64,000 nt of DNA from positions 1 through 64,000 of IMG/VR virus record IMGVR_UViG_3300013233_000235, one strand, 5' to 3'. A model generated the notes under the pieces. It searched no databases. It was given only the letters and a program-made list of their open reading frames with translations, and was not told the DNA's origin. Of the stretch, positions 29,218-61,080 are shown piece after piece (position 1 is the stretch's first letter; every line of letters begins with the position of its first letter). Position numbers and translations under genes: made by a program.

Positions 29218-29333
29218 ATAAAGTCAGCCCCTTCGGGGGCTTTCTTTTTTTATTTGTTTCACTCATATGTCAGAACTATATAACTTGTATGAAGAGGCAC
29301 ATTGATCTCTTATGTTGAAAGGATTTAGTTATG
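29218..29333 (+). repeat. terminator-promoter-hairpin-RBS cassette, full copy 1
   Basis: AGCCCCTTCGGGGGCTTTCTTTTTTTATTTGTTTC...AGAACTATATAACTTGTATGAAGAGGCACATTGATCTCTT...TTTAGTTATG. Confidence 0.85.
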
Positions 29334-30467
29334 AACGAAGAAAATATAGATACTATCGTGCTGGTAGATATCTGTGTAGGTGGGCTGGACACAGTGGATA
29401 CGGAACTACTGGCCCGTTGTTATACGGAGGGGTGTGTTGATCGGTTGGTATTAAAAGGTTACGACTTCGACGACATGGCTCGTAATAAGGGGCGGGTAAT
29501 GCTGGAGTTGTACGTGGCTGATGTGGCCGGTATCGTCGTTGCAACGCCCAGATCTGCAATGTTGGCGTCATGGGCTGGTGTTGACGCACTGGTGTTCGTG
29601 GATAATGGTACCGATAAGATGCTTGACCAGTATACGGATAAGGGGATCGTCGTCACGCATGTGGCTGGTGAGGGCGGCTGCTACATGACACTATCCCCAT
29701 CGGCAGCGGAGGCCCTAAGCGCTAATGCTCCGAGTGACGTGGCAATACCCAAATACGTTGGCCTACCGGCCACCACGGCTATATGTGAGTTAACAAACCA
29801 CATAAAACTACGACCCGGGGAATCCATGGCTAACCACACATACACCCGTTTGGCCCAGGGATGGTTGGCTCACACCACGGTTGGTGATATGATCTATCTA
29901 CGCCGTGGTGGGGTGGATGCTCGGTTCTCGTTTGGCAGTCCGGTGAGCATGGTAACAGTGGAGAAGCCCGATGCTTTGGCCCCACTGCTGTTAACAACCG
30001 ACCTTGGGACATACGTTGTGACCATGGGCGATGGTGGATTTGTTCAAGGTATGACACCAGAGAAGTACCAGGTGCCCGATCCAGTCGCACCTTCAGCCAA
30101 CTTCCTACAGGTGTACTACGATGGGCACATCGTGGTAAAACTACCCGATGGTACAACAATGTTTGTGTCACGCGGGTGCGGGGGCGTGGCGATGAACAGG
30201 TTATCCACCACGTATGTTTTCACCGACGCAGCTGGCCCGTTCGACCTGCTAACCCACTGCGGCCACCTGTGTATACTCGTCGGTGACGTGGTGCGCATAT
30301 ATGCGCCCGATGCACACCACACAGTTACAACACATCCCGCCGATGGCGCTGAGATGTTGGTTGCTAAACTATCCACGGGTATCGCTGTGGGTGATGGTGT
30401 AACCACCCAGTGGCCTGATGCCGCCCCATTGTGTAAAGAGTTTGCCGTAGCCCACCTATTAAATTAG
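29331..30467 (+). CDS. hypothetical protein (first gene after the cassette)
   Basis: 378-aa ORF with a beta-rich C-terminal half. Confidence 0.7.
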   Translation: MNEENIDTIVLVDICVGGLDTVDTELLARCYTEGCVDRLVLKGYDFDDMARNKGRVMLELYVADVAGIVVATPRSAMLASWAGVDALVFVDNGTDKMLDQYTDKGIVVTHVAGEGGCYMTLSPSAAEALSANAPSDVAIPKYVGLPATTAICELTNHIKLRPGESMANHTYTRLAQGWLAHTTVGDMIYLRRGGVDARFSFGSPVSMVTVEKPDALAPLLLTTDLGTYVVTMGDGGFVQGMTPEKYQVPDPVAPSANFLQVYYDGHIVVKLPDGTTMFVSRGCGGVAMNRLSTTYVFTDAAGPFDLLTHCGHLCILVGDVVRIYAPDAHHTVTTHPADGAEMLVAKLSTGIAVGDGVTTQWPDAAPLCKEFAVAHLLN

Positions 30468-30557
30468 GTGGGTCGCTATACTGTGAACCAGTACACGGTT
30501 CACATACGGCACCACCCGGTGCCACCTGGGAATGATCCCACTAAAAGGAAGATACAA

Positions 30558-30941
30558 ATGTCTAAAACCACATTAACCGATAAACTGATTGCCGCCGCCA
30601 ACACAGCCGGTGTGAAAGATAACCACGTGGTTATCGATTCAGCCACTTTCTTCGACAACGCCCCCAAGGGTGTTACAGAAAAGAGCTGGGCCAAGCATGA
30701 AGATTACCGCGATAAGTACGCGGTGGCCACAATGGGTGCCACCGCTAAGGTGTTCGAGGACCATTCTGAAGGGGAGGTCTCTGCCGAGTTCGGTATGGGT
30801 GATAACACCACCGCCCGTCCGGCAATTGTGTTCAACGAAGGTGGTGACACCACCGCCGTCTTACGCGTAGAGTGCACGCTGTCCACAGAAAACAGAGATG
30901 CCTTTAACGAAATTGATGATTGGGTAAAGGCCAACATGTGA
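30558..30941 (+). CDS. hypothetical protein
   Basis: AGGA RBS, start MSKTTL, followed by its own terminator. Confidence 0.7.
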   Translation: MSKTTLTDKLIAAANTAGVKDNHVVIDSATFFDNAPKGVTEKSWAKHEDYRDKYAVATMGATAKVFEDHSEGEVSAEFGMGDNTTARPAIVFNEGGDTTAVLRVECTLSTENRDAFNEIDDWVKANM

Positions 30942-31025
30942 TACAGCCTTACGAGCCGGATGATGGGCCTGAGGACCTCGAAGAAGATACCGAGGAGGTA
31001 GACTTCTACGGGGATAGTTAGTACT

Positions 31026-31053
31026 AGAGGGGTCTTTTGACCCCTCTTTTTTT
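31026..31053 (+). terminator. intrinsic terminator
   Basis: AGAGGGGTC-TTTT-GACCCCTCT plus T-tract. Confidence 0.8.
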
Positions 31054-31073
31054 GTTCATTTGGGAGGTTATAT

Positions 31074-31568: not shown

Positions 31569-31575
31569 AACACAT

Positions 31576-31611: not shown

Positions 31612-31640
31612 TGCATCTAAACAAACATTTAAACCGGCAA

Positions 31641-42197: not shown

Positions 42198-42251
42198 GTT
42201 GTATCCGGTTTTGTGCGCGATATTGCGCTGTATTTAAAAAGGATCTTAGTT

Positions 42252-42452
42252 ATGTATGAATCGGCAGTTTTGTCATTGATTTTGAATGGGTTGGCGGTGG
42301 CGGTTGTCATCACATTGGTTGTCGGATTACTGGTGTATGTGCTTGGGTCGCCAAATGATCACCCCCTGACACCCCCGCGTAAACGTGGGTCTCGCGGTGA
42401 CTCGCCATCATGTGACCACGGTGACTCCGGTTCCTCTGGGGGTTGTGAATAG
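42252..42452 (+). CDS. small membrane protein with G/S/D/C-rich tail
   Basis: TM helix followed by DSPSCDHGDSGSSGGCE. Confidence 0.65.
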   Translation: MYESAVLSLILNGLAVAVVITLVVGLLVYVLGSPNDHPLTPPRKRGSRGDSPSCDHGDSGSSGGCE

Positions 42453-42644
42453 TGTTGCACATTTACATACTGGGCATAGCTCCCCTGATTATGGCCACAC
42501 TTGTGGCCGTTGGCGTAGCATTCTGTGCATGTCGCATAACTGCGTACAGAAGTTGTTAAACATTATTATATAAACGCCCACATAGGTGTTTATAGGAAAC
42601 GGATAGGGAATGGGACTACAAACGCTGGCCAGGAGAACGGCACT

Positions 42645-42776
42645 ATGTTTGATCCATACCTAAGTCTGGTGGTTATAAATAGTCTCACCATATCTGGGGG
42701 GTTATGGGCACTAGCCCTTATCTCTTTAGATGAGCACAAACGTTGTGCCCGATTGGACCATAATGACCTACCTTGA
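42645..42776 (+). CDS. 43-aa single-pass membrane peptide
   Basis: AGGAG RBS; MFDPYLSLVVINSLTISGGLWALALISLDE... (translated by hand). Confidence 0.5.
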   Translation: MFDPYLSLVVINSLTISGGLWALALISLDEHKRCARLDHNDLP

Positions 42777-42894
42777 AAGGTTGATCATACTAGGTTTAAT
42801 AGGGTGGTGCCTATACGCATGGGTGCCGAACATGACTGAGTGTACCACTGTTGAGAAGGCCACTTGGACAATCCAGAGATGGGACGGGGAATAG
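42763..42894 (+). CDS. 43-aa single-pass membrane peptide
   Basis: Overlaps the previous ORF; MTYLERLIILGLIGWCLYAWVP... Confidence 0.45.
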   Translation: MTYLERLIILGLIGWCLYAWVPNMTECTTVEKATWTIQRWDGE

Positions 42895-42961
42895 CTTATA
42901 TAACACATGTTGTATAGGCGCGTTGGCGGACATTCATCCATTATTAAATGGAGTGTCAATT

Positions 42962-43291
42962 ATGAGTGATACCTTAAAAATCGCAGTTGTCATTTTTGCG
43001 TTAGACTTTATGATCATTGGCTTTCTGTGGCTTGCTGCTAAACGGCATCATGATCGCATTACTGCCCGCAGAAACCGTGGTCGTTTAGATGAGATCCTCA
43101 CGGCCTGTGATACTATCACATGCCATCCTGTAAACCTCCAACACATGTCTGCTCACGTAGGCGTCGCCCATTTGGAACCTAGCATCCTGGTTCGCGAAGT
43201 TTCCGCAATGGGTGAAAGCGACTTGGCGCTGTTTCACAAGGAAGTTATGAAGGCGGCCGATGCTATCGCCGCAAGTAAGGAGCCAAGTTAA
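42962..43291 (+). CDS. membrane-anchored hypothetical protein
   Basis: GGAG RBS; N-terminal TM segment IAVVIFALDFMIIGFLWLAA. Confidence 0.65.
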   Translation: MSDTLKIAVVIFALDFMIIGFLWLAAKRHHDRITARRNRGRLDEILTACDTITCHPVNLQHMSAHVGVAHLEPSILVREVSAMGESDLALFHKEVMKAADAIAASKEPS

Positions 43292-43345
43292 AGTGCGGCC
43301 GGCCAGTATTGGCCGGTCGTTTTATACGTACCTTAAGGATTGTGC

Positions 43346-43648
43346 ATGAATACTTACAAATTATCGTTAGCGCTGGGCCTAGATAGTAGGGGCTTCGGTA
43401 AGTTTATAGAGGTCCGTGGGGGTCGATATAGTGGCTTCTCAGTCTGGGCATTGGCGGGGCTTGCCAGGACATACATTGGTAAGTCCACAGGGTCCGCTGA
43501 CACCGTGTTGCGCAACCACTGTGGTGACCTCCTTATAGCCGGGCGTCTAAAAAATGGACAACGTTGCAAATGGTATATCCGGTCTACCGAGGTCGGTTAT
43601 AAACTAGGGTGCCCCACCTCAAACGAGGGTGCTAATGGAGTTAGATGA
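43346..43648 (+). CDS. hypothetical basic protein, weakly BRO-N-like
   Basis: AAGGA RBS; LARTYIGKS...DTVLRNHC pattern. Confidence 0.5.
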   Translation: MNTYKLSLALGLDSRGFGKFIEVRGGRYSGFSVWALAGLARTYIGKSTGSADTVLRNHCGDLLIAGRLKNGQRCKWYIRSTEVGYKLGCPTSNEGANGVR

Positions 43649-43994
43649 CATGGTCGCTGATTACGCGATGTTTTACCCAGCCTTCCTGATAGTTGCTGGC
43701 GTTAGTATTTTATTCGGGCTAGGCGTTGCCCTGTATGTCTGTAGGAATGTTATACCCTGTGGCGATTTTAGGGCCATGCGTAGGGCTGGGATGATCCCTA
43801 TCGATATGGACCCGGTATCTAACCGGATCATCGAGATTCGGATAGCGCTTGCTCTAAACCAGATGTCCGCAAATTCCATTGAAGAAAATGGCCACATTGT
43901 CATCAAATCCGTGGCTGTACACTGGGCCGCTAAAATCGTAAGGCTGCCCCCATCCGCCAGAGCTGAGATGCTAGCACGGCTGGAAATGATATAA
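43635..43994 (+). CDS. membrane-anchored hypothetical protein
   Basis: N-terminal TM segment FLIVAGVSILFGLGVALYV. Confidence 0.6.
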   Translation: MELDDMVADYAMFYPAFLIVAGVSILFGLGVALYVCRNVIPCGDFRAMRRAGMIPIDMDPVSNRIIEIRIALALNQMSANSIEENGHIVIKSVAVHWAAKIVRLPPSARAEMLARLEMI

Positions 43995-43995
43995 T

Positions 43996-44062
43996 GGAAT
44001 CAGTTATATTTCAATGACATATAACTAAAATGAATACTCATGTATAATTCTGTACATGGGTC
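43996..44062 (+). promoter_or_regulatory. early-type promoter variant with leader hairpin
   Basis: TTTCAATGACATATAACTAAAATG shared with 47665-47725, then hairpin CTCATGTATA-ATTC-TGTACATGGG. Confidence 0.6.
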
Positions 44063-44103
44063 ACCTGATACCACTTATATAGGTGGTGCAGTTTGGAGTA
44101 GCT

Positions 44104-44277
44104 ATGTTAGCTTTGGATACTGACAAGGTTATGGCAATTGATTGCCGCCTTGTGTACATGGAGACCCTGCCAGAATGGCAGGGTTGTAGAAAGGTCTGCA
44201 CCATATGTGGTGCAGACACCTGCACCCTAAAGGGTGCAGACGTAATGGACCTGCGAAAGCAGGTCCATGGTGAATAG
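44104..44277 (+). CDS. small Cys-rich protein
   Basis: GGAG RBS; CRKVCTICGADTC. Confidence 0.55.
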   Translation: MLALDTDKVMAIDCRLVYMETLPEWQGCRKVCTICGADTCTLKGADVMDLRKQVHGE

Positions 44278-44300
44278 CCCTTCGGGGCTTTCTTTTTTTA
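44276..44300 (+). terminator. UUCG terminator of the cassette family
   Basis: AGCCC-TTCG-GGGCT-TTCTTTTTTT. Confidence 0.8.
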
Positions 44301-44780
44301 TTGGAGAATACCATCCTTAAAATACTGATATGTCTGATGTTGTTACCCATCCCCTGCCGTAGTGAGATACCCAGTATGGCCACCACAGCTAACTACAACG
44401 GGTCTGCACTATTGGATGCCATGGCCCCCAGGGTTGAGTACCGCGCGTTCCAGGATGGGCGGCTACCTAACATAACCTGTTGGGTCGGTTTCCCTGTACG
44501 TGGGCGCAGACGTTTAGGTGCCGGTGACAAATATGAGGTGATTGGCTTGCCCAGCATGGATTGTGCCAGGTTATCCACAAAACCTGTTGTTAATATGCCG
44601 GCAGTACCCACCCGGTGGAATATCCTGTTATCTAAACGGGATGCGGCGTGGTTAACCCCATACAAGTTAGGTGCGGTTTACGACACCATCAACCGCACAC
44701 TTGTATACACCCTACACAGGGGTCCTTACACGCGCGGTGATACGGGTAGGATCATTATATCCGTGGTGCCAATGCTGTGA
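44301..44780 (+). CDS. hypothetical protein (start uncertain)
   Basis: 159-aa ORF filling the gap between regulatory elements. Confidence 0.5.
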   Translation: MENTILKILICLMLLPIPCRSEIPSMATTANYNGSALLDAMAPRVEYRAFQDGRLPNITCWVGFPVRGRRRLGAGDKYEVIGLPSMDCARLSTKPVVNMPAVPTRWNILLSKRDAAWLTPYKLGAVYDTINRTLVYTLHRGPYTRGDTGRIIISVVPML

Positions 44781-44791
44781 TCAATAATTTT

Positions 44792-44852
44792 TCAGAACTA
44801 TATAACTTGTATGAAGAGACATCTTGATCTCTTGTATAGGAGTTTAGTTATG
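44792..44852 (+). promoter_or_regulatory. promoter-hairpin-RBS half cassette
   Basis: CAGAACTATATAACTTGTATGAAGAGACATCTTGATCTCTTGTATAGGAGTTTAGTTATG. Confidence 0.8.
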
Positions 44853-44954
44853 AGTGACTTATTTTCTGCTGTCCGTGCCGTTGTAGTACTATCCACCATC
44901 ATCGTAGGTGGCTGGTGGGTTGCCAACAATGGTGCGATTTTCTACATCCACTAA
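44850..44954 (+). CDS. 34-aa single-pass membrane peptide
   Basis: Uses the cassette RBS; MSDLFSAVRAVVVLSTIIVGGWWVANNGAIFYIH. Confidence 0.6.
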   Translation: MSDLFSAVRAVVVLSTIIVGGWWVANNGAIFYIH

Positions 44955-44967
44955 TGAGGAATACCCC

Positions 44968-45078
44968 ATGTTTAAATGTTTTAAGACCCTGGCGGTGCTG
45001 GCATTTGCTGCTATCACCATCATCATGTCACTGCGATACGGGTGCGCTCGCACCATCCCTAAGGGGTGCTCTGACTAA
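44968..45078 (+). CDS. 36-aa single-pass membrane peptide
   Basis: GAGGA RBS; MFKCFKTLAVLAFAAITIIMSLRYGCARTIPKGCSD. Confidence 0.55.
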   Translation: MFKCFKTLAVLAFAAITIIMSLRYGCARTIPKGCSD

Positions 45079-45114
45079 CTAACCAAAACCCCCCTGCATT
45101 CGTGCAGGGGGGTT

Positions 45115-45417
45115 ATGAGGGCTATGATGATTACATCAGCAAGTGGCGTGTTTGTAGCTAGATCGGCCGATGGCACGTGGGGTGTCACTGACCCCGATGG
45201 TCGGTACGAAGGGTTGGCCTGCGATACCCTATGGTTGTTTGGTAATGCCATGTTACTAACAACCACTTTCTTCATAGTGGCTGGTGGGCCGATGGTTTGG
45301 GCACCAGTGGGTGTAACGTTTGACTCTGTGGAAATAACCTGCTGTGGGGAAAGCTTCTCTGTAACAGGGTACTACGGGGTGAATACCGTCCGCTGGGTTT
45401 GTGAGGTACGCATGTGA
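45115..45417 (+). CDS. hypothetical protein
   Basis: 100-aa ORF coupled to the next gene. Confidence 0.55.
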   Translation: MRAMMITSASGVFVARSADGTWGVTDPDGRYEGLACDTLWLFGNAMLLTTTFFIVAGGPMVWAPVGVTFDSVEITCCGESFSVTGYYGVNTVRWVCEVRM

Positions 45418-45827
45418 GTAACTTCATTTTCTGTGACATCGATGGGGTGCTTAGGAAATACCCACACGACCACCCGCATATGGCTGTGGATGATCACACC
45501 CCGGGGAGATTGGAAACGATGCTTAGGGTACTCGATGCTAAGCTTGTTATAACGAGCAGTTGGAACTTTGGGAAAACCCCCCAGAGCATGCGCAGTGCCC
45601 TTTGGAAATTGGGTATGCAATCTAAGGTAGATTTCCTGACGAAGGATAGCGGGAATGGTAGGGCGGCTGATATAAGTGCATTTCTGGATACCCATCCAGA
45701 GGTGTCCCAGTATGCCGTATTGGATGATGATAGGGATGTGTTAAATATCCCCAATAGCTTTTTAATAGATGGCAATGTTGGGCTGTCTGATAACGATGTG
45801 GAACGGGTAGTTAAATCCTTCCGCTAA
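45414..45827 (+). CDS. HAD-family phosphatase (Swiss-army-knife RNA-repair HAD type)
   Basis: FCDIDGVL, LVITSSW and YAVLDDD motifs. Confidence 0.85.
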   Translation: MSNFIFCDIDGVLRKYPHDHPHMAVDDHTPGRLETMLRVLDAKLVITSSWNFGKTPQSMRSALWKLGMQSKVDFLTKDSGNGRAADISAFLDTHPEVSQYAVLDDDRDVLNIPNSFLIDGNVGLSDNDVERVVKSFR

Positions 45828-45838
45828 GGAGTTTAGTT

Positions 45839-46015
45839 ATGAGTAGATTTATCCGCAGTGTTACATGCATAGTACCTAGATCCAACGGGGGTGGTTACAA
45901 ACGCGGGGTGATGGTCACGTACGCTGCCGATGGTACATCGAGCAATCGTGGCCCCATACCAGTGGTTGTGCCGAAACCGGAGCGGCTGGCCCTTCGCGGG
46001 CTTGCCCCTAAGTAA
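45839..46015 (+). CDS. 58-aa hypothetical protein
   Basis: Preceded by the cassette RBS GGAGTTTAGTTATGAGTAGA. Confidence 0.55.
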   Translation: MSRFIRSVTCIVPRSNGGGYKRGVMVTYAADGTSSNRGPIPVVVPKPERLALRGLAPK

Positions 46016-46125
46016 TAAGTCAGCCCCTTCGGGGGCTTTCTTTTTTATTTGTTTCCATACATTCTTAGAACTATATAACTAATATGAAGAGACACTTTGA
46101 TCTCTTGTATAGGAGTTTAGTTATG
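46016..46125 (+). repeat. terminator-promoter-hairpin-RBS cassette, full copy 2
   Basis: Near-identical to the copies at 60970, 29218 and 46816. Confidence 0.9.
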
Positions 46126-46818
46126 AGTAGAGTACTGGGTGTATTAAATAGTTACCGGCACCGGGTGTTGCAAATGCGTGGGATCAGTACGTATGAGTTT
46201 ATCAAAGCGGTTGGCACAGACTGGGTGAGTACCTCTATCAGCAAGCGGGTAGGTAAGCACCCGCCCGTGTTGATACATTCAGAGGATGGCGAGGTGGAGA
46301 TCCACATAGCCTACATCCGCCCGGTGTACCCGGATACGCAGGGTGTGATCTTACACATCCGTGTTAAGGACAAGCCCGCGCAATTCCGATTTATGAAGAA
46401 CGCCACATTTTTCCACACGCCGGGGCATAGTGGGTTTATAATCGGTGACAATCTGGTGGATGTGCGTGACACCACCGCCTACATCAGCCGCATATACAAC
46501 CAAGAGCCGTACGCGGTGACTGTGACGAACCTGTTGGTGGGTTCTCTATCTGTTGAATTACTAGATACCAAAGAAGTGACCTACCCGCTACCAACCGATG
46601 TAGATCTGGGGACGGTATGCGCCAAGCAGTGGCTCATAGGCGACAAGGTCGTGATGCACACTTATACCGCAGATGGTTCTACCCTTCTTGCCGCAGAACA
46701 CCATGGTCGGTGGAAGGTGCTGGGGTGGGAGTATGGTGATGCCACGGTACGCGAGGCCGTCGCATTCGGCAACATGTGCATGCCTAAGTTAAATTCTAAA
46801 CTGGACAATCCGACATAA
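46123..46818 (+). CDS. hypothetical protein
   Basis: Start re-set to the ATG after the GGAG RBS. Confidence 0.7.
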   Translation: MSRVLGVLNSYRHRVLQMRGISTYEFIKAVGTDWVSTSISKRVGKHPPVLIHSEDGEVEIHIAYIRPVYPDTQGVILHIRVKDKPAQFRFMKNATFFHTPGHSGFIIGDNLVDVRDTTAYISRIYNQEPYAVTVTNLLVGSLSVELLDTKEVTYPLPTDVDLGTVCAKQWLIGDKVVMHTYTADGSTLLAAEHHGRWKVLGWEYGDATVREAVAFGNMCMPKLNSKLDNPT

Positions 46819-46928
46819 GGACAGCCCCTTCGGGGGCTTTCTTTTTTATTTGTTTCACCCATGTGTAAGAACTATATAACTTGTATGAAGAGACACTTTG
46901 ATCTCTTATTGTGAAGGATGTTGATATG
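46816..46928 (+). repeat. terminator-promoter-hairpin-RBS cassette, full copy 3
   Basis: AGCCCCTTCGGGGGCT...AGAACTATATAACTTGTATGAAGAGACACTTTGATCTCTT. Confidence 0.9.
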
Positions 46929-47126
46929 AATGCGTTACTAGCGGTGTTTGTCTGCGTGCTGACAGATGGGCTGTTGTGGGTATCCCTGACACCATATGTG
47001 GTATCTCCCGCGGATGTGTTTATCCGGATTGTGTTACCTGGCGCCACCATTGTGGGGCTGTACACTAGCCGTGCAATATTGCACACCCAATCCCAACTTG
47101 GAGGTAAAAAGAAATGTTATACTTAG
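46926..47126 (+). CDS. small two-TM membrane protein
   Basis: Two hydrophobic segments and a basic C-terminus. Confidence 0.6.
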   Translation: MNALLAVFVCVLTDGLLWVSLTPYVVSPADVFIRIVLPGATIVGLYTSRAILHTQSQLGGKKKCYT

Positions 47127-47626
47127 TGCTGCATAGTCTAATAACCGCTGGGGTGTTGTACATCACCCACCTCGTTATATCCGACTACCTTGAGAGGCTG
47201 TCAGCCACAGCCGGTGAGGATGTATTCACACTGCTATCTGATTGGCATACCGGGGTATCCCGCCATCAGATTATGCCACTACCATGTGTGTACCCATATG
47301 GTGGCCGGTGGTTTAGCCCTGCCGTGCCACCGGCGGCCATTTCAGAAGCTGTACGCGCATATCTAATGGCGGATAAGTCGGGGTTCTATCGGCGGTATAA
47401 GTTACTACGGGCGGCCATGAAAGATGCTAGGGCCACGGTAATTCTTATAGGGGAACTTACAGAAAAGGCTTACAGCATAGCTGAGATCTGGGATGAGGGC
47501 ACGTTCCGGATGTATCCTGGATTAAAGCGTACGCCCATTTCAGGTGACTGCTACGTTGGTAACTGGGGTGGTAAACTGTGTTACGACCGGCCCATGGTCC
47601 GGATGTGCTTGGAAACCATCTCATAA
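47114..47626 (+). CDS. membrane-anchored hypothetical protein
   Basis: GGAGG RBS; hydrophobic N-terminus. Confidence 0.65.
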   Translation: MLYLVLHSLITAGVLYITHLVISDYLERLSATAGEDVFTLLSDWHTGVSRHQIMPLPCVYPYGGRWFSPAVPPAAISEAVRAYLMADKSGFYRRYKLLRAAMKDARATVILIGELTEKAYSIAEIWDEGTFRMYPGLKRTPISGDCYVGNWGGKLCYDRPMVRMCLETIS

Positions 47627-47630
47627 AGAC

Positions 47631-47725
47631 AGCCCCTTCGGGGCTTTCTTTTTTATGTAAATCTGGAATCAACGTATTTTCAATGACATATAACTAAAAT
47701 GGATATAGGCGTTTTGACTTATATC
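47631..47725 (+). promoter_or_regulatory. cassette terminator, variant promoter and leader hairpin with a different stem but the same apex
   Basis: AGCCCCTTCGGGGCTTTC; CATATAAC-TAAA-ATG; GATATAGG-CGTTTTGA-CTTATATC. Confidence 0.75.
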
Positions 47726-47754
47726 ACTATGGCTTAACAGCCAGGAGATTTACC

Positions 47755-48291
47755 ATGAGTGATTTCACAGTAACAGATTTCGGCTTCGTTTCTATGTCTT
47801 CAAAAGAGTTGGATGTCGCCGGAACTACCGGTGCTACACTCGGCTCCGTGGCATACGGCTACAGCCTACCCACCAAGGCGGTCATGGTTCGCCACGGGTG
47901 GAGACTCACCGTCGTGGCCACCGGTGGAATGGGTAACTGCGGAGTGGGTATCCTGACCCCCGCCTCCGCGCGAACGCGGGCCATTCACTTGGCGGCATAC
48001 ACCGATCGTTGGTCAGATCAGTTGGGCTGCGCACCATCGGAGCTGTATAATTTCTACGACGTAGTAAAAAGCACCAGATTTGGTTGGGAGGTGCTTGGAT
48101 GGGTAATCGCCAATCCCTCCACCGATGTGTGGGTGAGTTACCCCGGCCAGGGTCGCGGGGTAAACAACTGGCGTGAGGCATCCGCCTCACGCAAGGATCT
48201 GTTGGATGGATTCAGTGTACCAAGACTCGATGCTATGCACACGCTGGTGCAATCGTTAGAGAGCTGCCTGGTTGAAAAATACCTAGCCTAA
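47755..48291 (+). CDS. hypothetical protein
   Basis: AGGAG RBS; bounded by a promoter and a cassette terminator (monocistronic module). Confidence 0.75.
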   Translation: MSDFTVTDFGFVSMSSKELDVAGTTGATLGSVAYGYSLPTKAVMVRHGWRLTVVATGGMGNCGVGILTPASARTRAIHLAAYTDRWSDQLGCAPSELYNFYDVVKSTRFGWEVLGWVIANPSTDVWVSYPGQGRGVNNWREASASRKDLLDGFSVPRLDAMHTLVQSLESCLVEKYLA

Positions 48292-48295
48292 AGAC

Positions 48296-48330
48296 AGCCC
48301 CTTCGGGGGCTTTCTTTTTTATTTGTTTCC
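48296..48330 (+). terminator. UUCG terminator of the cassette family
   Basis: AGCCCC-TTCG-GGGGCT-TTCTTTTTTATTTGTTTCC. Confidence 0.85.
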
Positions 48331-48350
48331 ATCAATTATCGTAAGGGGTT

Positions 48351-49046
48351 ATGTTTTATGTACACTTACCATATCAACCACCGGAGTCAATCGTGAGCAA
48401 GTTATTAATAATCTACATCCGCGCAGCTGTAATCGCGGTATTACTTACGCCGTTCGTGCTACCAATCTTAAGTTATATTCCCACCCACCTACTCGTCCCC
48501 GGGGTTGCGCTACAAGTGGGGTTGGGTTTAATCCTAGCCCTACTACTCAACCGCCCTGACGCCGCCATCGATTCAAATACCCCCGATCGGCTGAAAGAGT
48601 TATTCCTGGATGGTGGGTATGGTTTGAACACACCACTGGTGTTAATCATCGGCAGTCGACGCATAACCATCTCCAGCCCATACGCCGTTGCGGATACATT
48701 GACTGCGGAGATGTGTCGCCGTACCATCTTAGGCAACCGGGTCATTAGTAAGCGTGTGTCAGCCCAGGTGGTAGACGGGATAAAGAGTATTGCACAGTTG
48801 ATCCGGTATAAGCGGCGTTTTGAATCTCACGCGGCCGAGTTGAAGAAACGCACTCCCAACATCCGTAGAAAACTTATTAAACGTCGCGGTGCCCTATCCA
48901 GATGGCCCAGCATGGGTTATCTGGGTGAGGTAATTGATTTTTATAAAGGGCCTGCCAATCTGGTATCACCAGAAGTCGAGTTGGAAGATATCGAGGGTAT
49001 GATGAGTACACTAACACATATTAGCGAATTAGGATTATCTAAATGA
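48351..49046 (+). CDS. two-TM membrane protein, paralog A
   Basis: TM hairpin; DTLTAEMCRRTILGNR. Confidence 0.7.
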   Translation: MFYVHLPYQPPESIVSKLLIIYIRAAVIAVLLTPFVLPILSYIPTHLLVPGVALQVGLGLILALLLNRPDAAIDSNTPDRLKELFLDGGYGLNTPLVLIIGSRRITISSPYAVADTLTAEMCRRTILGNRVISKRVSAQVVDGIKSIAQLIRYKRRFESHAAELKKRTPNIRRKLIKRRGALSRWPSMGYLGEVIDFYKGPANLVSPEVELEDIEGMMSTLTHISELGLSK

Positions 49047-49089
49047 GTAGCGCTATTACGATCCTGCTGCCACTGGTGGGGTACGATCT

Positions 49090-49689
49090 ATGAACTGTTA
49101 CCGCGATGTGTTAGTTTGGCTCATACGTGTGTGTGTCTTTCTAGGCCTGTATGTGGTGTTTTTCGGCGACCCTAGATTCCTGCCGCCATTAGACCAAGTG
49201 AGTGCTCTGGCATATGCCATGTTCTTAAGTCTGCTTATGCAGAGGTCTACAGTGGTAGTACCTATGCATTTAGTGGTTGACGTTAGTCAGTTATTTAATG
49301 CCACGTGTAGCAGTTCCACTGAACCGTTAGTGGTACGCCACCGGCGTGGGCTTAGCGTCATATACACAGTTGCCGGCATACAAGACACGCTTAATAGGGA
49401 CTTGTGCAGGACCACCATTCTGGGCAACAGGCAGCTTGACGGGCCGTTGGTGGACGAGTTCATCATAGGTCTGTCCCACTTGCGTAGCCGGGCTTATAAT
49501 GTTAATGAGTTGCTGGGTATGGTGGACGATGCCTATAAATCCGGAGCGCCATTGCCGAAACTAGGTGACCCCGTCCTACACAGGCTGATGCACAGCCTTA
49601 TCCGCGCCGACCCAGTTGATCGGAGGCTGATTGTGGCCGGCATCAGTGATGGCGACGTTGGATTATTATCGGAGGTCTTATGTCCGTAA
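49090..49689 (+). CDS. two-TM membrane protein, paralog B
   Basis: TM hairpin; DTLNRDLCRTTILGNR. Confidence 0.7.
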   Translation: MNCYRDVLVWLIRVCVFLGLYVVFFGDPRFLPPLDQVSALAYAMFLSLLMQRSTVVVPMHLVVDVSQLFNATCSSSTEPLVVRHRRGLSVIYTVAGIQDTLNRDLCRTTILGNRQLDGPLVDEFIIGLSHLRSRAYNVNELLGMVDDAYKSGAPLPKLGDPVLHRLMHSLIRADPVDRRLIVAGISDGDVGLLSEVLCP

Positions 49690-49833: not shown

Positions 49834-49835
49834 CT

Positions 49836-49872
49836 ATATAAGACGACGGGCGTTTTGCCCGTCGTCTTATAT
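49836..49872. terminator. bidirectional terminator
   Basis: 16-bp inverted repeat ATATAAGACGACGGGC-GTTTT-GCCCGTCGTCTTATAT between convergent genes. Confidence 0.8.
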
Positions 49873-49880
49873 GTGCTTTG

Positions 49881-50960
49881 TTACTCGTCCCAGTTTAATG
49901 CTGAACCAGTTTGGTATTCCGTGACCTTCGTTTCAAAGAAGTTTTTTTCTTTTCGGATGTTAGCCTGCTCATCCAGCCATGGTAGTGCCGATTCTGCCCC
50001 TGGGAATGGCTCTTTGATCTCAAGCGCTCTCGCCCTACGGTTGGCTATATATCTGAACTGGGCTATGTGGCTATCCGAATCATACCCAAGTATCCCTGTT
50101 GGCAAGATGTATTTAGCATAATCGTGTTCCACACGTTCGGACTCCGACCACATCTCATCTAGCTCGGATTGGATAAGTACCACGTTTTCTTCCAAGATGA
50201 TCTGCTTAATGACTCGGATGCCAAATGTGGCATGCATTGTTTCGTCTCGCATGATGTATTGTAGCTGCTCGGCTGTACCGCGCATGAGGCCTTTGCGCTG
50301 TAGTGCGAATATGGGGCTAAACCCATTATAGAACCAGCTACCTTCGAACACGCATGCAAAGAAGATATAACCCATGACGAACTTACGAAGCTGCTCAGGG
50401 TCTTCTAAGTCCATATCACTGCGCATGATACCGTTGAGTCGATCTGCGCTCATCTGTATCTTAGCGTTGATCTCAGGCACCACCCGGTACCTATTGTACA
50501 CCTCAGCCTGATCCAGTCCGAGGGTTTCAATGCAATGCTGGTATGTCCAACAATGCATCGCTTCTTCGTACACCTGTCTAGCCTGGTAGACCTGTAACTC
50601 GGGGGCGGACATCTTCTCCATGACTGCCAAACCTATGTTACGCATAGCCATTATATCAGACGTGGTTAAATAGGCCAGCACATTGACATAGAGGTGTCTC
50701 TCGGCCTCTGTAAGCTTGTGTTTGTAATCACTGATGTCATTAGTCATATTGATGTCTAACGGCGTCCAGTGGTTCTTATTAGCGTTTAAGAAGTATGTCC
50801 ACGCCCACGGGTATTTGAAAGGAGCTAACTGGTTGATATCCCCTTTACCATTGACTACCCGTTTATCATTGGCGGCTGTTGCAGATGTGCTACTTACAAC
50901 CTCTTTGGCGGGGGAGGTGGGTTTCTTATTCAACTTACCGAAATTTGTATCCCAATCCAT
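49881..50960 (-). CDS. nrdB: class I ribonucleotide reductase small (beta/R2) subunit
   Basis: NQLAPFKYPWAW, EEAMH..TY (radical Tyr), FEGSWFYNGF, RDETMH, EKNFFE. Confidence 0.95.
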   Translation of the reverse strand: MDWDTNFGKLNKKPTSPAKEVVSSTSATAANDKRVVNGKGDINQLAPFKYPWAWTYFLNANKNHWTPLDINMTNDISDYKHKLTEAERHLYVNVLAYLTTSDIMAMRNIGLAVMEKMSAPELQVYQARQVYEEAMHCWTYQHCIETLGLDQAEVYNRYRVVPEINAKIQMSADRLNGIMRSDMDLEDPEQLRKFVMGYIFFACVFEGSWFYNGFSPIFALQRKGLMRGTAEQLQYIMRDETMHATFGIRVIKQIILEENVVLIQSELDEMWSESERVEHDYAKYILPTGILGYDSDSHIAQFRYIANRRARALEIKEPFPGAESALPWLDEQANIRKEKNFFETKVTEYQTGSALNWDE

Positions 50961-59055: not shown

Positions 59056-59087
59056 ATAAACACCCTGCTTAATCGCAGGGTGTTTAT
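59056..59087 (+). terminator. terminator-like inverted repeat
   Basis: ATAAACACCCTGC-TTAATC-GCAGGGTGTTTAT. Confidence 0.7.
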
Positions 59088-59149
59088 AACGTAATCATTT
59101 TTTATTGTACTGCCGGGTAATGTATACATAACTAGGTGGAGAGCCACGC

Positions 59150-59779
59150 GTGATAAAAATACCGAGACTTATTAGTGGGTGCAATTTGGACAACATTAAA
59201 GCCCTATGTAACCCACTTGTACCAACCGGCAGTCTGATGGTGCCACTATCAACGGTTTGTGCAGTTAGCGGATTGAGCCCTGATATGCTAGCGGCATGCC
59301 TTGCCAGAGCATCCGGCGAGTTTGTAACAGTGGGTGGGGTGCCGAATATACGCGTATCCGACCTCACCACTTTCGTAGGTAGAGCATGCCTACACGTGTC
59401 GCCCAACCGTGCATTCACAGCACTGTCGTATGAACGGAACGATGAGACACACCTACAGCTCACACACATCGGATCAGATATGCCGGTGTACTATGTATTT
59501 GAAGGGGCACAACCCCTACGAGCCATGGTTATGTCAGACACACACATCCTTAGTATACACATGGATGGGGTATTTGCCGCCGAGTTAACAACGGATATTG
59601 CGGGACAACCTGAATTACAGGGATTCACGAAAGTGGGTTTCGAAGTCCTACCGGAAGACACTATTGCCATTATCGATAAAGCTGTATCTAATGGCAAGCT
59701 TACATTTAATGTATTAACAGCATCCGGCATTTACACATGCTGGGTGCCACTTGGGGTATGTATTAATGCGGGAATTTAA
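59150..59779 (+). CDS. hypothetical protein with a weak excisionase-type HTH at the N-terminus
   Basis: VPLSTVCAVSGLSPDML...VTVGGVPNIRVSDLTTFV. Confidence 0.5.
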   Translation: MIKIPRLISGCNLDNIKALCNPLVPTGSLMVPLSTVCAVSGLSPDMLAACLARASGEFVTVGGVPNIRVSDLTTFVGRACLHVSPNRAFTALSYERNDETHLQLTHIGSDMPVYYVFEGAQPLRAMVMSDTHILSIHMDGVFAAELTTDIAGQPELQGFTKVGFEVLPEDTIAIIDKAVSNGKLTFNVLTASGIYTCWVPLGVCINAGI

Positions 59780-60332
59780 AAGATTTATTTTCATCGATGG
59801 TGTTGGGTATATCCATTACAGCGACGGGTTCTGCGAAGAGTACGGGTCGTGTGGGGCCGGACCCAAACCCATTTACGCACAAGGTCGCACAGTACTATTT
59901 GGTAGTGCGGATACGAATGTGGTGTGGGAGTTTACGGCCCCCGATGGTTGGCAACCTGGCGACCAAGAGACCCTGATAGAACACTTGGCTGCGGACTATG
60001 CGTCGGCGGCCATGTATGGGAATGGGCCAACCGTGATTACACAGGATGCTGCGTTCTATGGGGATGGCGTGCACCAACTGGCTGACGTATTGACGAGGCT
60101 GTTGGGTGGGTATACTATCTCGGCCATCGTGGGACTCAAATCAGGCGGGGTGATGTTAGAGATCCGGGGTAGGTATCTGCATAAACTGGTGTCGGCTAAC
60201 TACGATGATACCCCCGTGGTGTATGACACGTTACCAGCGGTGTTTGATCTCTGCGCAGCCACGATTGACCCCCCAGTGGTGCACTTCGAAGACTGGCGAA
60301 TAGAGCCTGATGGCTTATACTACGAAAAATAG
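59766..60332 (+). CDS. hypothetical protein
   Basis: ORF within the operon. Confidence 0.6.
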   Translation: MREFKRFIFIDGVGYIHYSDGFCEEYGSCGAGPKPIYAQGRTVLFGSADTNVVWEFTAPDGWQPGDQETLIEHLAADYASAAMYGNGPTVITQDAAFYGDGVHQLADVLTRLLGGYTISAIVGLKSGGVMLEIRGRYLHKLVSANYDDTPVVYDTLPAVFDLCAATIDPPVVHFEDWRIEPDGLYYEK

Positions 60333-60342
60333 GAATAGTTAA

Positions 60343-60972
60343 ATGTACACGTATAGAGATGTTACAAATGTTAGCGCCCGTATCGAGAAGATCGAGGGGT
60401 ACTCACTGATCTATGATGGGAATGAGTTCCCAAAATCCACGACCTACGATGAGAGACTAGCGATTTTAGATATACCATATAACCAGGGTCGGATATCCCT
60501 AGATACCGATGACCTCGTGGAGTTCTACAACGGGGATGGGCTGGGCTACGTCGTGGGCACGGATCTGGATGGGGTGTGTTACGCAGTGGCCATGGTGGCA
60601 ATCAGATTAGGCAAACGGATTGGCGTGAAGAATGGGATGCTGATGTTTAACGAGGCCTTTATGGCTGGCGGCGAACTTATTATGAATCATGGTAGCACCA
60701 TGACGTATCTGGAAAATGGGCGGGTATTAGAAACCGCCGGGGTGAGCGATAAACATCCTAAGCTGGCCTACGGTGAGATTGATGTCATCGGGGGGATGTA
60801 CATACACAGTGTGTCACCGGGTGGGGTACTGCATAGCACCCCCATCCCTAGCGAGTGCACATTGGTGTCACATGCTGACTACGTACAGGTTGCGGCCAGA
60901 GGTGGCCAGGTCAAGTATCGAATTCTAAACAACGGTATTACAACCCCAGTGTCAACAAAACCCCCAGAATAA
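60343..60972 (+). CDS. hypothetical protein
   Basis: AGGA RBS; ends at the cassette. Confidence 0.65.
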   Translation: MYTYRDVTNVSARIEKIEGYSLIYDGNEFPKSTTYDERLAILDIPYNQGRISLDTDDLVEFYNGDGLGYVVGTDLDGVCYAVAMVAIRLGKRIGVKNGMLMFNEAFMAGGELIMNHGSTMTYLENGRVLETAGVSDKHPKLAYGEIDVIGGMYIHSVSPGGVLHSTPIPSECTLVSHADYVQVAARGGQVKYRILNNGITTPVSTKPPE

Positions 60973-61080
60973 AGTTAGCCCCTTCGGGGGCTTTCTTTTT
61001 TATTTGTTTCCATACATTCTCAAGACTATATAACTACTATGAAGAGACGCTTTGATCTCTTATCTTGGAGTTTAGTTATG
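60970..61080 (+). repeat. terminator-promoter-hairpin-RBS cassette, full copy 4
   Basis: Nearly identical to 46016-46125, including TTGTTTCCATACATTCT and GGAGTTTAGTTATG. Confidence 0.9.

What the first reader, a model, noticed from the sequence alone, without database searches (positions are those of the whole stretch)
29218..61080. Dispersed ~110-bp terminator-promoter-RBS cassette that partitions accessory genes into modules
Seen: full copies at 29218, 46016, 46816 and 60970. Terminator-only or variant copies occur at 44276, 47631 and 48296, a promoter half at 44792, and RBS only at 45828. Even spacer bases with no obvious role (TTTATTTGTTTC, CATACATTCT) are shared between copies 15 kb apart, and the upstream gene's stop codon usually sits at the left edge. 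Established: T4-superfamily PeSL elements are repeated early-promoter stem-loops proposed to shuffle gene modules by recombination. Inference: these cassettes may act as homology blocks for excising, duplicating or acquiring single-gene modules (for example 46123-46818), like an integron without an integrase.
Basis: partly seen in the sequence, partly recalled or inferred. Interest (0 to 1): 0.7.

Follow-up and report, generated by a model that had tools for sequence, protein, structure and literature searches.

The report
Repeated early-promoter cassette of a jumbo phage
An uncultured phiKZ-like giant phage reuses one ~115-125-bp intergenic block (terminator, phage-polymerase early promoter, 5' RNA hairpin, ribosome site) in front of about 20 mostly orphan early genes, and the copies look mixed by recombination, but no evidence yet shows they move genes.

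Summary
All nine reported sites exist. Genome-wide (204-kb virus record, window = bases 1-64000) there are 19 full copies and about 10 partial ones, all on the + strand.

The phage is not T4-like. It is a phiKZ-like jumbo phage with two sets of multisubunit RNA polymerase genes. The promoter is not sigma-70-like. Its core (AGAAC TATATAAC, 6 nt, then G) fits the published early virion-polymerase promoter consensus of phiKZ-type phages. The same core recurs in the nearest relative (terminase 44% identical).

Each cassette reads: stop codon, intrinsic terminator, T-rich tract, early promoter, predicted 5'-terminal hairpin, Shine-Dalgarno, ATG.

In phiKZ, and mostly in the relative, identity is confined to about 30 nt. 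Here it spans about 115-125 nt, including dispensable positions:
- multi-base spacer, terminator and RBS haplotypes that reassort;
- a vestigial gene 3' end carried along with some copies;
- truncated copies that break inside the cassette.

So the copies have been copied or recombined, not merely kept similar by selection. Cargo genes are mostly orphans in variable islands between conserved core blocks.

The PeSL-like shuffling idea remains plausible but untested. No close relative is held, and only low-depth contigs of one run were available.

The parts
29206..29342 (+). Full cassette. True stop of the upstream gene at 29206-29208. Non-coding vestigial stretch ACCCCTCCCATAA. Terminator hairpin 29226-29241 plus T-tract. 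Promoter core 29272-29285. Predicted +1 G at 29291. Hairpin 29292-29311. SD. ATG at 29331 (378-aa orphan).
44276..44300 (+). Terminator-only copy (4-bp-shorter stem variant plus T-tract).
44781..44852 (+). Promoter core (44794-44807), hairpin and RBS, without terminator or T-tract. It heads a 4-gene unit (44850-46015) that includes a HAD_SAK_2 protein.
45828..45841 (+). Orphan RBS module GGAGTTTAGTTATG. It is the only 1 of 15 genome copies that lies outside a cassette.
46014..46125 (+). Full cassette. Stop at 46013-46015, terminator 46022-46037, core 46067-46080, predicted +1 at 46086, hairpin 46087-46106, ATG 46123.
46123..46818 (+). Single-gene module (231 aa) bounded by two full cassettes. 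It has no homolog among 5.8 billion proteins and no Pfam or PHROG family.
46815..46928 (+). Full cassette with spacer haplotype CACCCATGTGTA and RBS haplotype AAGGATGTTGAT. ATG at 46926.
47623..47757 (+). Diverged copy. Terminator 47631-47645. Core CATATAAC-(6N)-G with predicted +1 at 47701. Hairpin at +2..+25 with a different stem (GAUAUAGG/CUUAUAUC) but the same 8-nt loop type (CGUUUUGA). ATG at 47755.
48288..48337 (+). Truncated copy. Stop, terminator, T-tract and 9 nt of spacer (same haplotype as the copy at genome 153885), then unrelated sequence. No promoter.
60969..61080 (+). Full cassette. Here the left extension AACCCCCAGAATAA is the coding 3' end of gene 60343-60972. ATG at 61078 (193-aa orphan).
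62735..62754 (+). Promoter-core-only site (AGGCCTATATAACT, 6 nt, G) ahead of 62847-63902, followed by its own small hairpin.
42213..49689 (+). Variable island of small + strand genes between the conserved terminase and the conserved - strand block. It holds seven of the cassette copies. It is closed by an 18-bp-stem terminator at 49835-49873.
17048..23025 (+). Context: two multisubunit RNA polymerase genes (544 aa and 1443 aa) next to virion genes. This is the candidate virion RNAP set that would read the cassette promoters.

Best explanation
The element is the standard early intergenic region of an uncultured phiKZ-like (chimallivirus-type) jumbo phage, present as a homogenised family of about 115-125 bp.

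Reading left to right, each copy does the following:
1. It ends the upstream gene (stop codon).
2. It stops upstream transcription with a GC-rich hairpin plus U-tract.
3. It restarts transcription at a phage-specific early promoter, AGAAC-TATATAAC-(6 nt)-G+1, most likely read by the injected virion RNA polymerase.
4. It gives the mRNA a 37-40-nt leader that begins with a small hairpin (6-bp stem, 8-nt loop CRYNUUGA). I infer this to be a 5' stabiliser or a regulator-binding site.
5. It supplies a Shine-Dalgarno sequence and the ATG.

The cassettes therefore cut early, mostly orphan genes into insulated 1-4-gene expression units.

The similarity extends far beyond what function requires. I infer that the copies descend from one another and keep exchanging segments by homologous recombination or gene conversion. 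That makes them natural crossover points for deleting, duplicating or swapping the units between them, analogous to PeSLs.

Shown: the anatomy, the copy number, the strand bias, the match to the promoter class, conservation of the core in a relative, and the mosaicism.
Inferred: the polymerase assignment, the transcription start, the hairpin's role, and any part in gene shuffling.
For: Phage type:
- split RNAP genes, phiKZ-type sheath and terminase;
- best cultured terminase hits are jumbo Vibrio and Pseudomonas phages at about 40%;
- a syntenic relative carries the phiKZ_gp29PR and PhiKZ_VTX families;
- a second RNAP gene set lies at 73.9 kb and 83.2-85.3 kb.

Promoter:
- the core is invariant in 20+ copies, and AAC-(6N)-G is kept at all 26 sites;
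- it fits the published 201phi2-1 consensus ...WTTTRARR_BTATATTACDWHDGTG and phiKZ TATATTAC (PMC7058600 Table 2);
- it fits the consensus-(6N)-G+1 rule for AR9 and the start site 6 nt downstream of the consensus reported for phiKZ and phiR1-37 (PMC5312081);
- the relative has 6 copies of AAAACTATATCACTATTATG in 40.8 kb, all on the + strand;
- a core-only copy sits directly ahead of an RNAP beta-like gene, as expected for non-virion RNAP genes;
- the sigma-70 scan does not call the cassette promoter.

Terminator: -15.2 kcal/mol, z = -4.3. It is called by the terminator scan. Five different stem sequences sit at the same place.

Hairpin:
- the same geometry occurs with different stems at 47702-47725, genome 83190 and window 62754, and in two types in the relative;
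- 6 of 9 distinct leaders start with a hairpin at +1..+4, against a 17-19% background, p about 0.001-0.003, with the criterion chosen post hoc.

Copying and recombination:
- identity is above 0.85 from -35 to +40 but random outside -55 and ATG+12;
- discrete multi-base haplotypes of terminator, spacer, loop and RBS reassort: 10 of 15 segment pairs exceed the tree-compatible maximum;
- 73 of 171 informative site pairs are incompatible, PHI permutation p = 0.025;
- a 15-20-nt stretch left of the terminator is coding in one copy and non-coding in three or four others;
- truncated copies break inside the cassette;
- in phiKZ the identity covers only about -20..+15.

Cargo:
- 18 of the 20 proteins scanned against Pfam and PHROGs have no informative family match; the other two are an NAD-dependent DNA ligase and an HslV-like peptidase match;
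- few are paralogs, at only 28-41% identity;
- the islands differ between this phage and both relatives, while the flanking core genes are syntenic.
Against: - No transcript data exist. The start site, early timing and polymerase are assigned by analogy only.
- The cassette hairpin is weak (-5.2 kcal/mol) and no better than shuffles (z = +0.4).
- vRNAP promoters are known to tolerate little change (PMC5312081), so part of the uniformity could be selection.
- The T-tract block may be a functional upstream element, since phiKZ has a T-rich motif upstream of -19 (PMC8244752).
- No two full copies are more than 90.5% identical. Similarity does not fall with genomic distance (Mantel r = -0.09). So there is no sign of very recent or local copying.
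- The PHI p-value is modest.
- At 44% terminase identity, non-homologous cargo in the relative may partly reflect divergence beyond detection.
- A RecA-family search and a phiKZ nuclear-shell search found nothing. These are inconclusive negatives.
Confidence: 0.72

Rival explanations
1. PeSL-like mobile regulatory cassettes in the strong sense. Recombination between cassettes is a major, evolutionarily used route by which this phage excises (as circles), duplicates and acquires single-gene modules. This would be an integron-like gene-capture system run by general recombination.
For: - Same composite layout as PeSLs: stop codon, stem-loop, early promoter, SD, ATG, next to ORFans in variable regions (PMC2839356).
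- Direct repeats share 35-nt and 24-nt perfect blocks around single genes, for example 46016/46816.
- Identical 73-nt blocks lie 78 kb apart.
- Haplotype blocks are mosaic.
- Copies are truncated inside the cassette, and there is an orphan RBS module.
- A vestigial gene end is carried with some copies.
- A promoter sits in the same syntenic slot in the relative but with unrelated cargo.
- There is no site-specific recombinase.
Against: - No indel, duplication or circle junction has been observed.
- No close relative is held.
- The one run that holds the phage gave no joints.
- Cargo GC differs from the rest of the genome by only 2 points.
- The few paralogous cargo genes are old, at 28-41% identity.
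- A 14-kb phiKZ versus relatives comparison showed no promoter-bounded indel.
Confidence: 0.33
2. Pure functional constraint. The copies are alike only because every part (terminator, upstream element, promoter, leader, RBS) is under strong selection for one optimal sequence. Copying and recombination between copies play no part.
For: - Jumbo-phage early promoters are long and nearly invariant: a 34-nt consensus at 31 sites in N1M2 (PMC7058600).
- One change can inactivate an AR9 early promoter (PMC5312081).
- Similarity shows no relation to genomic distance.
Against: - Alternative terminator stems, spacers, loops and RBS versions coexist, so the exact sequence is not required. Yet they occur as discrete multi-base haplotypes shared by copies tens of kb apart, in reassorted combinations.
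- The non-coding remnant of a gene's 3' end is shared.
- Functional-looking promoter sites lack the T-tract, the terminator or the hairpin.
- In phiKZ the identity stops about 30 nt around the core, and the relative shares at most promoter-plus-hairpin in pairs.
Confidence: 0.15
3. Host sigma-70 early promoter cassette, as in T4-type PeSLs. TTGTTT, 17 nt and TATATA would be read by host RNA polymerase.
For: A TTGTTT-17-TATATA arrangement with an upstream T/A-rich tract can be read in full copies.
Against: - The first hexamer matches TTGACA at only 3 of 6 positions, and the scan does not list the site.
- Copies at 44794, genome 94987, 83171, 132843 and window 62735 keep the core but lack the TTGTTT block.
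- Conservation is centred on ACTATATAACT plus a fixed G 7 nt later, as in vRNAP promoters (PMC5312081).
- The relative keeps the core but not the -35-like block.
- phiKZ-type phages do not depend on host RNAP for transcription (PMC7598289).
Confidence: 0.06
4. A miniature transposable element or homing-type selfish repeat that inserts into intergenic DNA.
For: Many dispersed copies with sharp boundaries.
Against: - There are no terminal inverted repeats or target duplications.
- All copies have one orientation.
- Each copy fits exactly between a stop codon and the next ATG, with fixed spacing to the ATG.
- No transposase or recombinase was found.
Confidence: 0.03

Closest known systems
Early (virion-RNAP) promoters of phiKZ-related jumbo phages (phiKZ TATATTAC; 201phi2-1, OBP, N1M2, AR9 consensus motifs)
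   Same: - An AT-rich, nearly invariant motif centred near -10. TATATAAC differs from TATATTAC by one base, and the flanks fit 201phi2-1's RARR_B...DWHD.
- A conserved G 6 nt downstream of the consensus, where the start site is reported for phiKZ, phiR1-37 and AR9.
- Dozens of copies ahead of early operons, on the leading strand.
- A predicted leader of 37-40 nt, like phiKZ's 31-40 nt.
- An upstream terminator is also common in phiKZ.
(PMC7058600, PMC5312081, PMC8244752.)
   Different: Published motifs and phiKZ itself conserve about 10-35 nt. Here about 115-125 nt are shared, including the terminator stem, the spacer haplotypes, a leader hairpin, the RBS and the first codons. The sequence of the motif itself is new.
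PeSLs (promoter-early stem-loops) of T4-type phages (Arbiol et al. 2010, PMC2839356; Comeau et al. 2014, PMC4122927)
   Same: A composite intergenic cassette running from the upstream stop codon to the downstream ATG. It holds an early promoter plus a terminator stem-loop rich in G/C runs. It sits next to ORFans in variable regions between core blocks. It insulates the units transcriptionally. No dedicated recombinase is present.
   Different: - A different phage lineage (phiKZ-like, own RNA polymerases).
- The promoter is not sigma-70-type.
- The stem-loop position is fixed (upstream), not variable.
- The copies are longer and far more uniform.
- There is an extra leader hairpin.
- The defining evidence for PeSL function (cassette-bounded indels between near-identical phages, mini-circles) is not available here.
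Morons of lambdoid phages / integron gene cassettes
   Same: Single genes carried with their own promoter and terminator, added between core genes. The array looks like an integron.
   Different: Morons have no conserved flanking sequence. Integrons need attC sites and an IntI integrase, and no tyrosine or serine recombinase is found here.

Membership tests
phiKZ-type jumbo-phage early (vRNAP) promoter | Phage encodes two sets of multisubunit RNAP beta/beta' homologs | tested here: met
   Set 1 lies at 17048-18682 and 18694-23025. Set 2 lies at genome 73.9 kb (Rpb1_2) and 83224-85342 (Rpb2_6).
phiKZ-type jumbo-phage early (vRNAP) promoter | Highly conserved AT-rich motif of about 10 nt or more, over-represented upstream of operons and resembling TATATTAC-type consensus | tested here: met
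   ACTATATAACT (at most 1 mismatch) occurs 29 times on the + strand and once on the - strand. It fits the 201phi2-1 and phiKZ consensus in PMC7058600 Table 2.
phiKZ-type jumbo-phage early (vRNAP) promoter | Conserved start nucleotide (G) 6 nt downstream of the consensus | tested here: inconclusive
   AAC-(6N)-G is kept at all 26 sites and in the relative's 6 sites. No 5'-end data exist, so the start itself is unverified.
phiKZ-type jumbo-phage early (vRNAP) promoter | Motif conserved in related phages at equivalent places | tested here: met
   The relative contig Ga0172420_10000004 has 6 copies of AAAACTATATCACTATTATG. One lies in the same slot as the 29218 cassette.
phiKZ-type jumbo-phage early (vRNAP) promoter | Early, translation-independent, rifampicin-resistant transcription by virion RNAP | not testable with these tools
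   Uncultured phage. No RNA run holds it.
PeSL (T4-type promoter-early stem-loop) | Composite intergenic element: upstream stop, stem-loop terminator, early promoter, SD, start codon | tested here: met
PeSL (T4-type promoter-early stem-loop) | Sigma-70-like -35/-10 promoter used by host RNAP in a T4-like phage | tested here: not met
   The sigma-70 scan does not call it. Copies without the -35-like block keep the core. The phage is phiKZ-like.
PeSL (T4-type promoter-early stem-loop) | Preferential association with ORFans in hyperplastic regions between core modules | tested here: met
   18 of the 20 proteins scanned have no informative family match. p46123 has no homolog at all. The islands differ from both relatives while the core genes are syntenic.
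PeSL (T4-type promoter-early stem-loop) | Indels or replacements between close relatives with breakpoints in the elements; mini-circles | not testable with these tools
   No relative is closer than 44% terminase identity. There are only 3-5x contigs of one run, with no joints.
Intrinsic (rho-independent) terminator | GC-rich hairpin directly followed by a U-tract, placed after a stop codon | tested here: met
   -15.2 kcal/mol, z = -4.3. Called by the scan at 44276, 46022, 46823, 47631 and 48296. Stem variants keep their pairing.
Integron | IntI tyrosine recombinase with attI/attC sites | tested here: not met
   PF00589 and PF00239 give no match in the 204-kb record, and the controls ring.
MITE / transposable repeat | Terminal inverted repeats, target-site duplication, both orientations | tested here: not met
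   One orientation only. The boundaries coincide with the stop and start codons.

The most novel reading that the evidence does not exclude
In nucleus-forming-type jumbo phages, the virion-polymerase early promoter has been built into a homogenised ~120-bp 'expression socket' (terminator, promoter, leader hairpin, RBS). This socket doubles as the homology substrate for capturing, swapping and discarding orphan early genes. It would be a PeSL-like, integrase-free gene-cassette system that arose independently of the T4 one. A conserved leader-loop motif (CRYNUUGA) would give the whole early regulon one common post-transcriptional handle.
Probability: 0.3. Interest if true: 0.6.

Novelty: new variant of a known kind. 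Interest (0 to 1): 0.42.

Why it matters
It gives a sequence-level map of the early regulon of an uncultured phiKZ-like phage: 26 predicted early promoters and their units. That is directly usable for annotation and for choosing counter-defence or host-takeover candidates among the orphan genes.

If the cassettes are shown to be crossover points, the PeSL mechanism would extend from T4-type phages to a lineage with its own polymerases. That would help explain how jumbo phages turn over early accessory genes.

The leader hairpin, kept with changed stems and a kept loop, suggests a shared control point for early mRNAs. It could be tested in cultured relatives.

Tried and rejected
- Close relatives. 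Megablast of 44-49 kb against 50,697 phage records found nothing. The exact cassette pattern in viral contigs found nothing. A terminase-based locus search in viral contigs found nothing. The pattern in metagenome contigs gave 4 hits that share only the pattern and no other homology, so they are chance. The terminase search of 5.8 billion proteins gave a best hit of 44%.
- Reads. One microbial-mat run holds the same phage, but only as 3-5x Logan contigs. One contig is identical over 44377-44846. There are no joints. This is uninformative for rare rearrangements.
- The whole record of the relative is not held for genome search. I walked it with three look-ups instead.
- Rfam: no family matches in the window.
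- Local duplication or gene conversion gradient: rejected (Mantel r = -0.09, p = 0.83).
- Cargo as recent foreign DNA: only a 2-point GC difference. Weak.
- Cargo paralogy as the source of cassette similarity: rejected. Only 3 weak paralog links exist, at 28-41% amino-acid identity.
- Proof of principle in phiKZ versus phage 124.01 and PA_ZH1 over 14 kb. The regions are collinear. The one extra ORF is a paralog of PHIKZ020, not a promoter-bounded module. Uninformative.
- The phiKZ nuclear-shell protein and the RecA family were not detected. No conclusion is drawn.
- Thermodynamic significance of the cassette hairpin alone: not significant. Support comes only from its recurrence with different stems.

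Full report
**1. What the window is**

The window is bases 1-64000 of a 204,041-bp IMG/VR virus record. The record has a 239-bp terminal repeat and 50% G+C.

The large genes identify a phiKZ-like jumbo phage:
- two multisubunit RNA polymerase genes at 17048-18682 and 18694-23025;
- a phiKZ-type tail sheath at 32570-34597 (- strand);
- a large terminase at 39964-42084;
- a 3738-aa virion-type giant protein.

A second RNAP gene set lies outside the window, at 73.9 kb and at 83224-85342.

The nearest cultured phages are jumbo Vibrio and Pseudomonas phages at about 40% terminase identity. The nearest sequence anywhere in the held collections is a 222.9-kb metagenome contig at 44%. So the phage is not of the T4 superfamily, and it has no close relative in the collections.

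**2. The observation**

A profile built from the four full copies finds 19 full copies in the genome. It also finds:
- two copies without a terminator (window 44781; genome 94967);
- one without the hairpin (genome 164806);
- one truncated after the T-tract (window 48288);
- one diverged copy (window 47623);
- one terminator-only copy (window 44276);
- three promoter-core-only sites (window 62735; genome 83171 and 132843).

All are on the + strand.

Column-wise pairwise identity is at chance (0.25) outside the element. It rises about 55 nt upstream of the promoter core. It exceeds 0.85 from -35 to +40, apart from a 13-nt spacer (0.59). It is 0.64 in the RBS stretch and returns to chance 12 nt after the ATG. 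The element therefore measures about 115-125 bp and spans the whole intergenic region, from stop to start.

**3. Anatomy**

(a) Stop codon. It lies within 5 nt of the hairpin in 13 of 22 copies.

(b) Terminator. A GC-rich hairpin followed by CTTTCTTTTTT: -15.2 kcal/mol, z = -4.3, and called by the terminator scan. Five different stem-loop sequences occupy this position, all able to pair. What matters is therefore the structure.

(c) T-rich block ATTTGTTTC, followed by a 13-nt spacer.

(d) Promoter core AGAAC TATATAAC T, then NN TAT G.

(e) Hairpin. Directly after that G comes AAGAGA, then an 8-nt loop, then TCTCTT.

(f) SD (GGAG or AAGGA) and the ATG, 37-40 nt after the G. The first codons are often MSK or MNEE.

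**4. Which promoter**

The sigma-70 reading fails for three reasons:
- The scan does not list the site.
- Five sites keep the core but lack the TTGTTT block.
- The relative keeps the core but not that block.

The core instead fits the published early-promoter consensus of phiKZ-related phages. phiKZ has TATATTAC and 201phi2-1 has ...WTTTRARR_BTATATTACDWHDGTG (PMC7058600, Table 2). It also fits the rule that the start lies 6 nt downstream of the consensus: G+1 in AR9, and the same spacing reported for phiKZ and phiR1-37 (PMC5312081). All 26 sites here keep AAC-(6N)-G.

Reviews state that each RNAP-encoding jumbo phage has such a motif ahead of early operons, and that it is read by the virion RNAP (PMC7598289).

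Three further points agree:
- The predicted leader (37-40 nt) matches phiKZ's usual 31-40 nt (PMC8244752).
- The relative carries six copies of AAAACTATATCACTATTATG in 40.8 kb, all on one strand.
- A core-only copy stands directly ahead of the RNAP beta-like gene at 83224, as expected if non-virion RNAP genes are early genes.

The assignment to the virion RNAP and the start site are inferences by analogy. No transcript data exist.

**5. The leader hairpin**

On its own the cassette hairpin is weak: -5.2 kcal/mol, no better than shuffles. But a hairpin recurs at the same place with different stems:
- The diverged copy at 47623 has GAUAUAGG/CUUAUAUC around an 8-nt loop CGUUUUGA, at +2..+25.
- The site at genome 83190 has GGUAG/CUACC around CACAUUGU.
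- Window 62754 has another.
- The relative has two types, GAUAAC/GUUAUC and GACAAC/GUUGUC.

Six of nine distinct leaders begin with a hairpin at +1..+4, against 17-19% of controls (p about 0.001-0.003). I chose the criterion after seeing the data.

I read this as a real feature of early mRNAs in this clade. It is most simply a 5'-terminal stabiliser. The kept loop (CRYNUUGA within this genome) hints at a binding site. The role is inferred.

**6. Selection or copying**

Comparators. In the first 50 kb of phiKZ, seven TATATTAC promoters share only about -20..+15. Terminators are often present upstream but differ. Three of those copies share 64-76 nt. In the relative the common block is 29 nt, with two pairs also sharing their hairpin type.

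Here about 115-125 nt are shared by 19 copies, and the shared positions include ones that are demonstrably free to vary:
- Terminator stem, spacer, loop and RBS each exist in several versions.
- These versions are discrete multi-base haplotypes, shared between copies tens of kb apart.
- They are combined in different ways: 10 of 15 segment pairs exceed the tree-compatible number of combinations.
- 73 of 171 informative site pairs are incompatible, with PHI permutation p = 0.025.

A stretch of 15-20 nt left of the terminator adds to the case. It reads AACCCCCAGAATAA or ACCCCTCCCATAA. In the 60969 copy it is the coding end of a gene. In the 29218, 95436 and 159750 copies, and apparently in the 203110 copy, it lies after the true stop. 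I read it as a gene end carried along when a cassette was copied.

Other copies break off inside the cassette:
- 48288 stops in the spacer, with the haplotype of the copy at genome 153885.
- 164806 stops after TATGA.
- 94967 starts within the T-block.
- 45828 holds the RBS module alone, although the other 14 of its 15 genome copies lie in cassettes.

Together these show descent by copying and exchange between copies, not only convergent constraint.

Limits to this conclusion:
- No pair exceeds 90.5% identity over the whole element.
- Similarity does not depend on genomic distance.
- The cargo genes are not recent duplicates.

**7. Cargo and islands**

Of the 20 proteins scanned against Pfam and PHROGs (cassette-led genes and their unit neighbours), 18 have no informative family match. 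Two of those 18 score only against families with no assigned function: the 45414-45827 protein matches the HAD_SAK_2 domain and an unknown-function PHROG, and the 30468-30941 protein has one marginal unknown-function PHROG hit. The two informative matches are an NAD-dependent DNA ligase and an HslV-like peptidase hit. The single gene between the 46016 and 46816 cassettes has no homolog among 5.8 billion proteins.

Core blocks are syntenic with the relative. They run from RNAP to the SbcC-like gene, from tail tube to terminase, and include the 457-aa gene and the RNR small subunit. The + strand small-gene islands between these blocks differ in size and content:
- After the terminase there are 7.5 kb here, 3.3 kb in one relative and none in another. 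Only one gene is shared.
- Thirteen small genes at 43.7-51 kb of the relative have no counterpart here.
- The relative's promoter at 19638 sits in the same slot as the 29218 cassette but leads unrelated genes.

This is the pattern described for hyperplastic regions with PeSLs (PMC2839356, PMC4122927). At this evolutionary distance, however, it cannot show where the breakpoints were.

**8. Verdict on the shuffling hypothesis**

Direct repeats with 24-35-nt perfect blocks flank single genes. Identical 73-nt blocks lie far apart. These are plausible substrates for homologous recombination, and the mosaic haplotypes show that the copies do exchange sequence. No site-specific recombinase is encoded.

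However, no deletion, duplication, circle or relative-specific indel has been seen. The tools could not provide the test. I put the strong PeSL-like reading at about one in three.

No paper in the searched library links such cassettes to jumbo phages.

**9. Classification**

The promoter is a new member of the known class of jumbo-phage early promoters. The terminator-promoter composite is also seen in phiKZ. What is unusual is the length and uniformity of the shared block, its leader hairpin, and the evidence of exchange between copies. It works like a PeSL but fails one defining PeSL feature, the sigma-70 promoter in a T4-type phage. I therefore file it as a new variant of a known kind, of moderate interest.

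Noticed in passing
window 5772-16988 (-): A 3738-aa ORF. It has a tail-fibre-like N-terminus (phrog_3201) and an M23-type metallopeptidase or endolysin-like domain at residues ~3010-3199. It is probably a giant virion or ejection protein with a cell-wall-degrading domain.
   Followed up: no
window 47702-47725; genome 83190-83207; cassette hairpins (e.g. 46087-46106): Three different stems enclose an 8-nt loop of the same type (CACUUUGA / CGCUUUGA / CGUUUUGA / CACAUUGU). In the relative's type-A leader, ACUUUG sits at the same +9..+14 position. This may be a binding or cleavage site common to early mRNAs.
   Followed up: partly
window 29209-29221, 60957-60972; genome 95427-95439, 159738-159752, 203097-203113: A C-run (ACCCCC / ACCCCTCCC) just upstream of the terminator could pair with the GGGGG arm of the terminator as an alternative structure. 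I read it as a vestigial gene end, but a translation-coupled anti-terminator is not excluded.
   Followed up: partly
window 49835-49873: A perfect 18-bp-stem hairpin (3-nt loop) lies between the convergent + strand island and the - strand RNR gene. It is likely a bidirectional terminator that closes the island.
   Followed up: no
window 45414-45827: A HAD_SAK_2 domain protein (the HAD domain of 'Swiss army knife' RNA-repair proteins, phrog_1818) lies inside a cassette-led four-gene unit.
   Followed up: no
window 1-738 with genome 203218-204041: The record's ends cut a gene. The cassette-led ORF starting at 203218 runs through the 239-bp terminal repeat and ends at window 738 (about 440 aa). 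It is a 41%-identical paralog of the cassette-led gene at 200876 (438 aa). A third distant paralog lies at 198758. Each has its own cassette.
   Followed up: partly
window 49881-50960 (-) vs L013:19479-21377: The RNR small subunit is 359 aa here but 632 aa in the relative, with 68% identity over 222 aa. The relative probably carries an insertion such as an intein or an extra domain, and it also has an RNR large subunit that is absent at this place here. Relative L014 has an HNH_3 gene between the sheath and VTX genes.
   Followed up: no
genome 83171-85342 (outside the window): A promoter-core-only copy lies directly ahead of a 706-aa RNAP beta-like gene (Rpb2_6). This is the expected early-transcribed non-virion RNAP subunit.
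   Followed up: partly
cassette ATG +3..+11, all copies: The first three or four codons are non-randomly alike (ATGAGTAAAG... or ATGAACGAAGAA..., with A invariant at +4), even though the proteins are unrelated. The cause is either selection on translation initiation or homology that reaches into the coding sequence.
   Followed up: partly
L017 (phiKZ) 2638-2712, 4139-4213, 4496-4559: phiKZ itself has three copies of a 64-76-nt promoter-plus-leader block at 82-95% identity within 2 kb. Extended early-promoter cassettes therefore exist on a small scale in the type phage too.
   Followed up: partly
run X1 (microbial mat metagenome): The same phage is present in a public microbial-mat run at about 3-5x. 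One contig is 100% identical over 44377-44846, and another is the genome-200766 cassette.
   Followed up: yes
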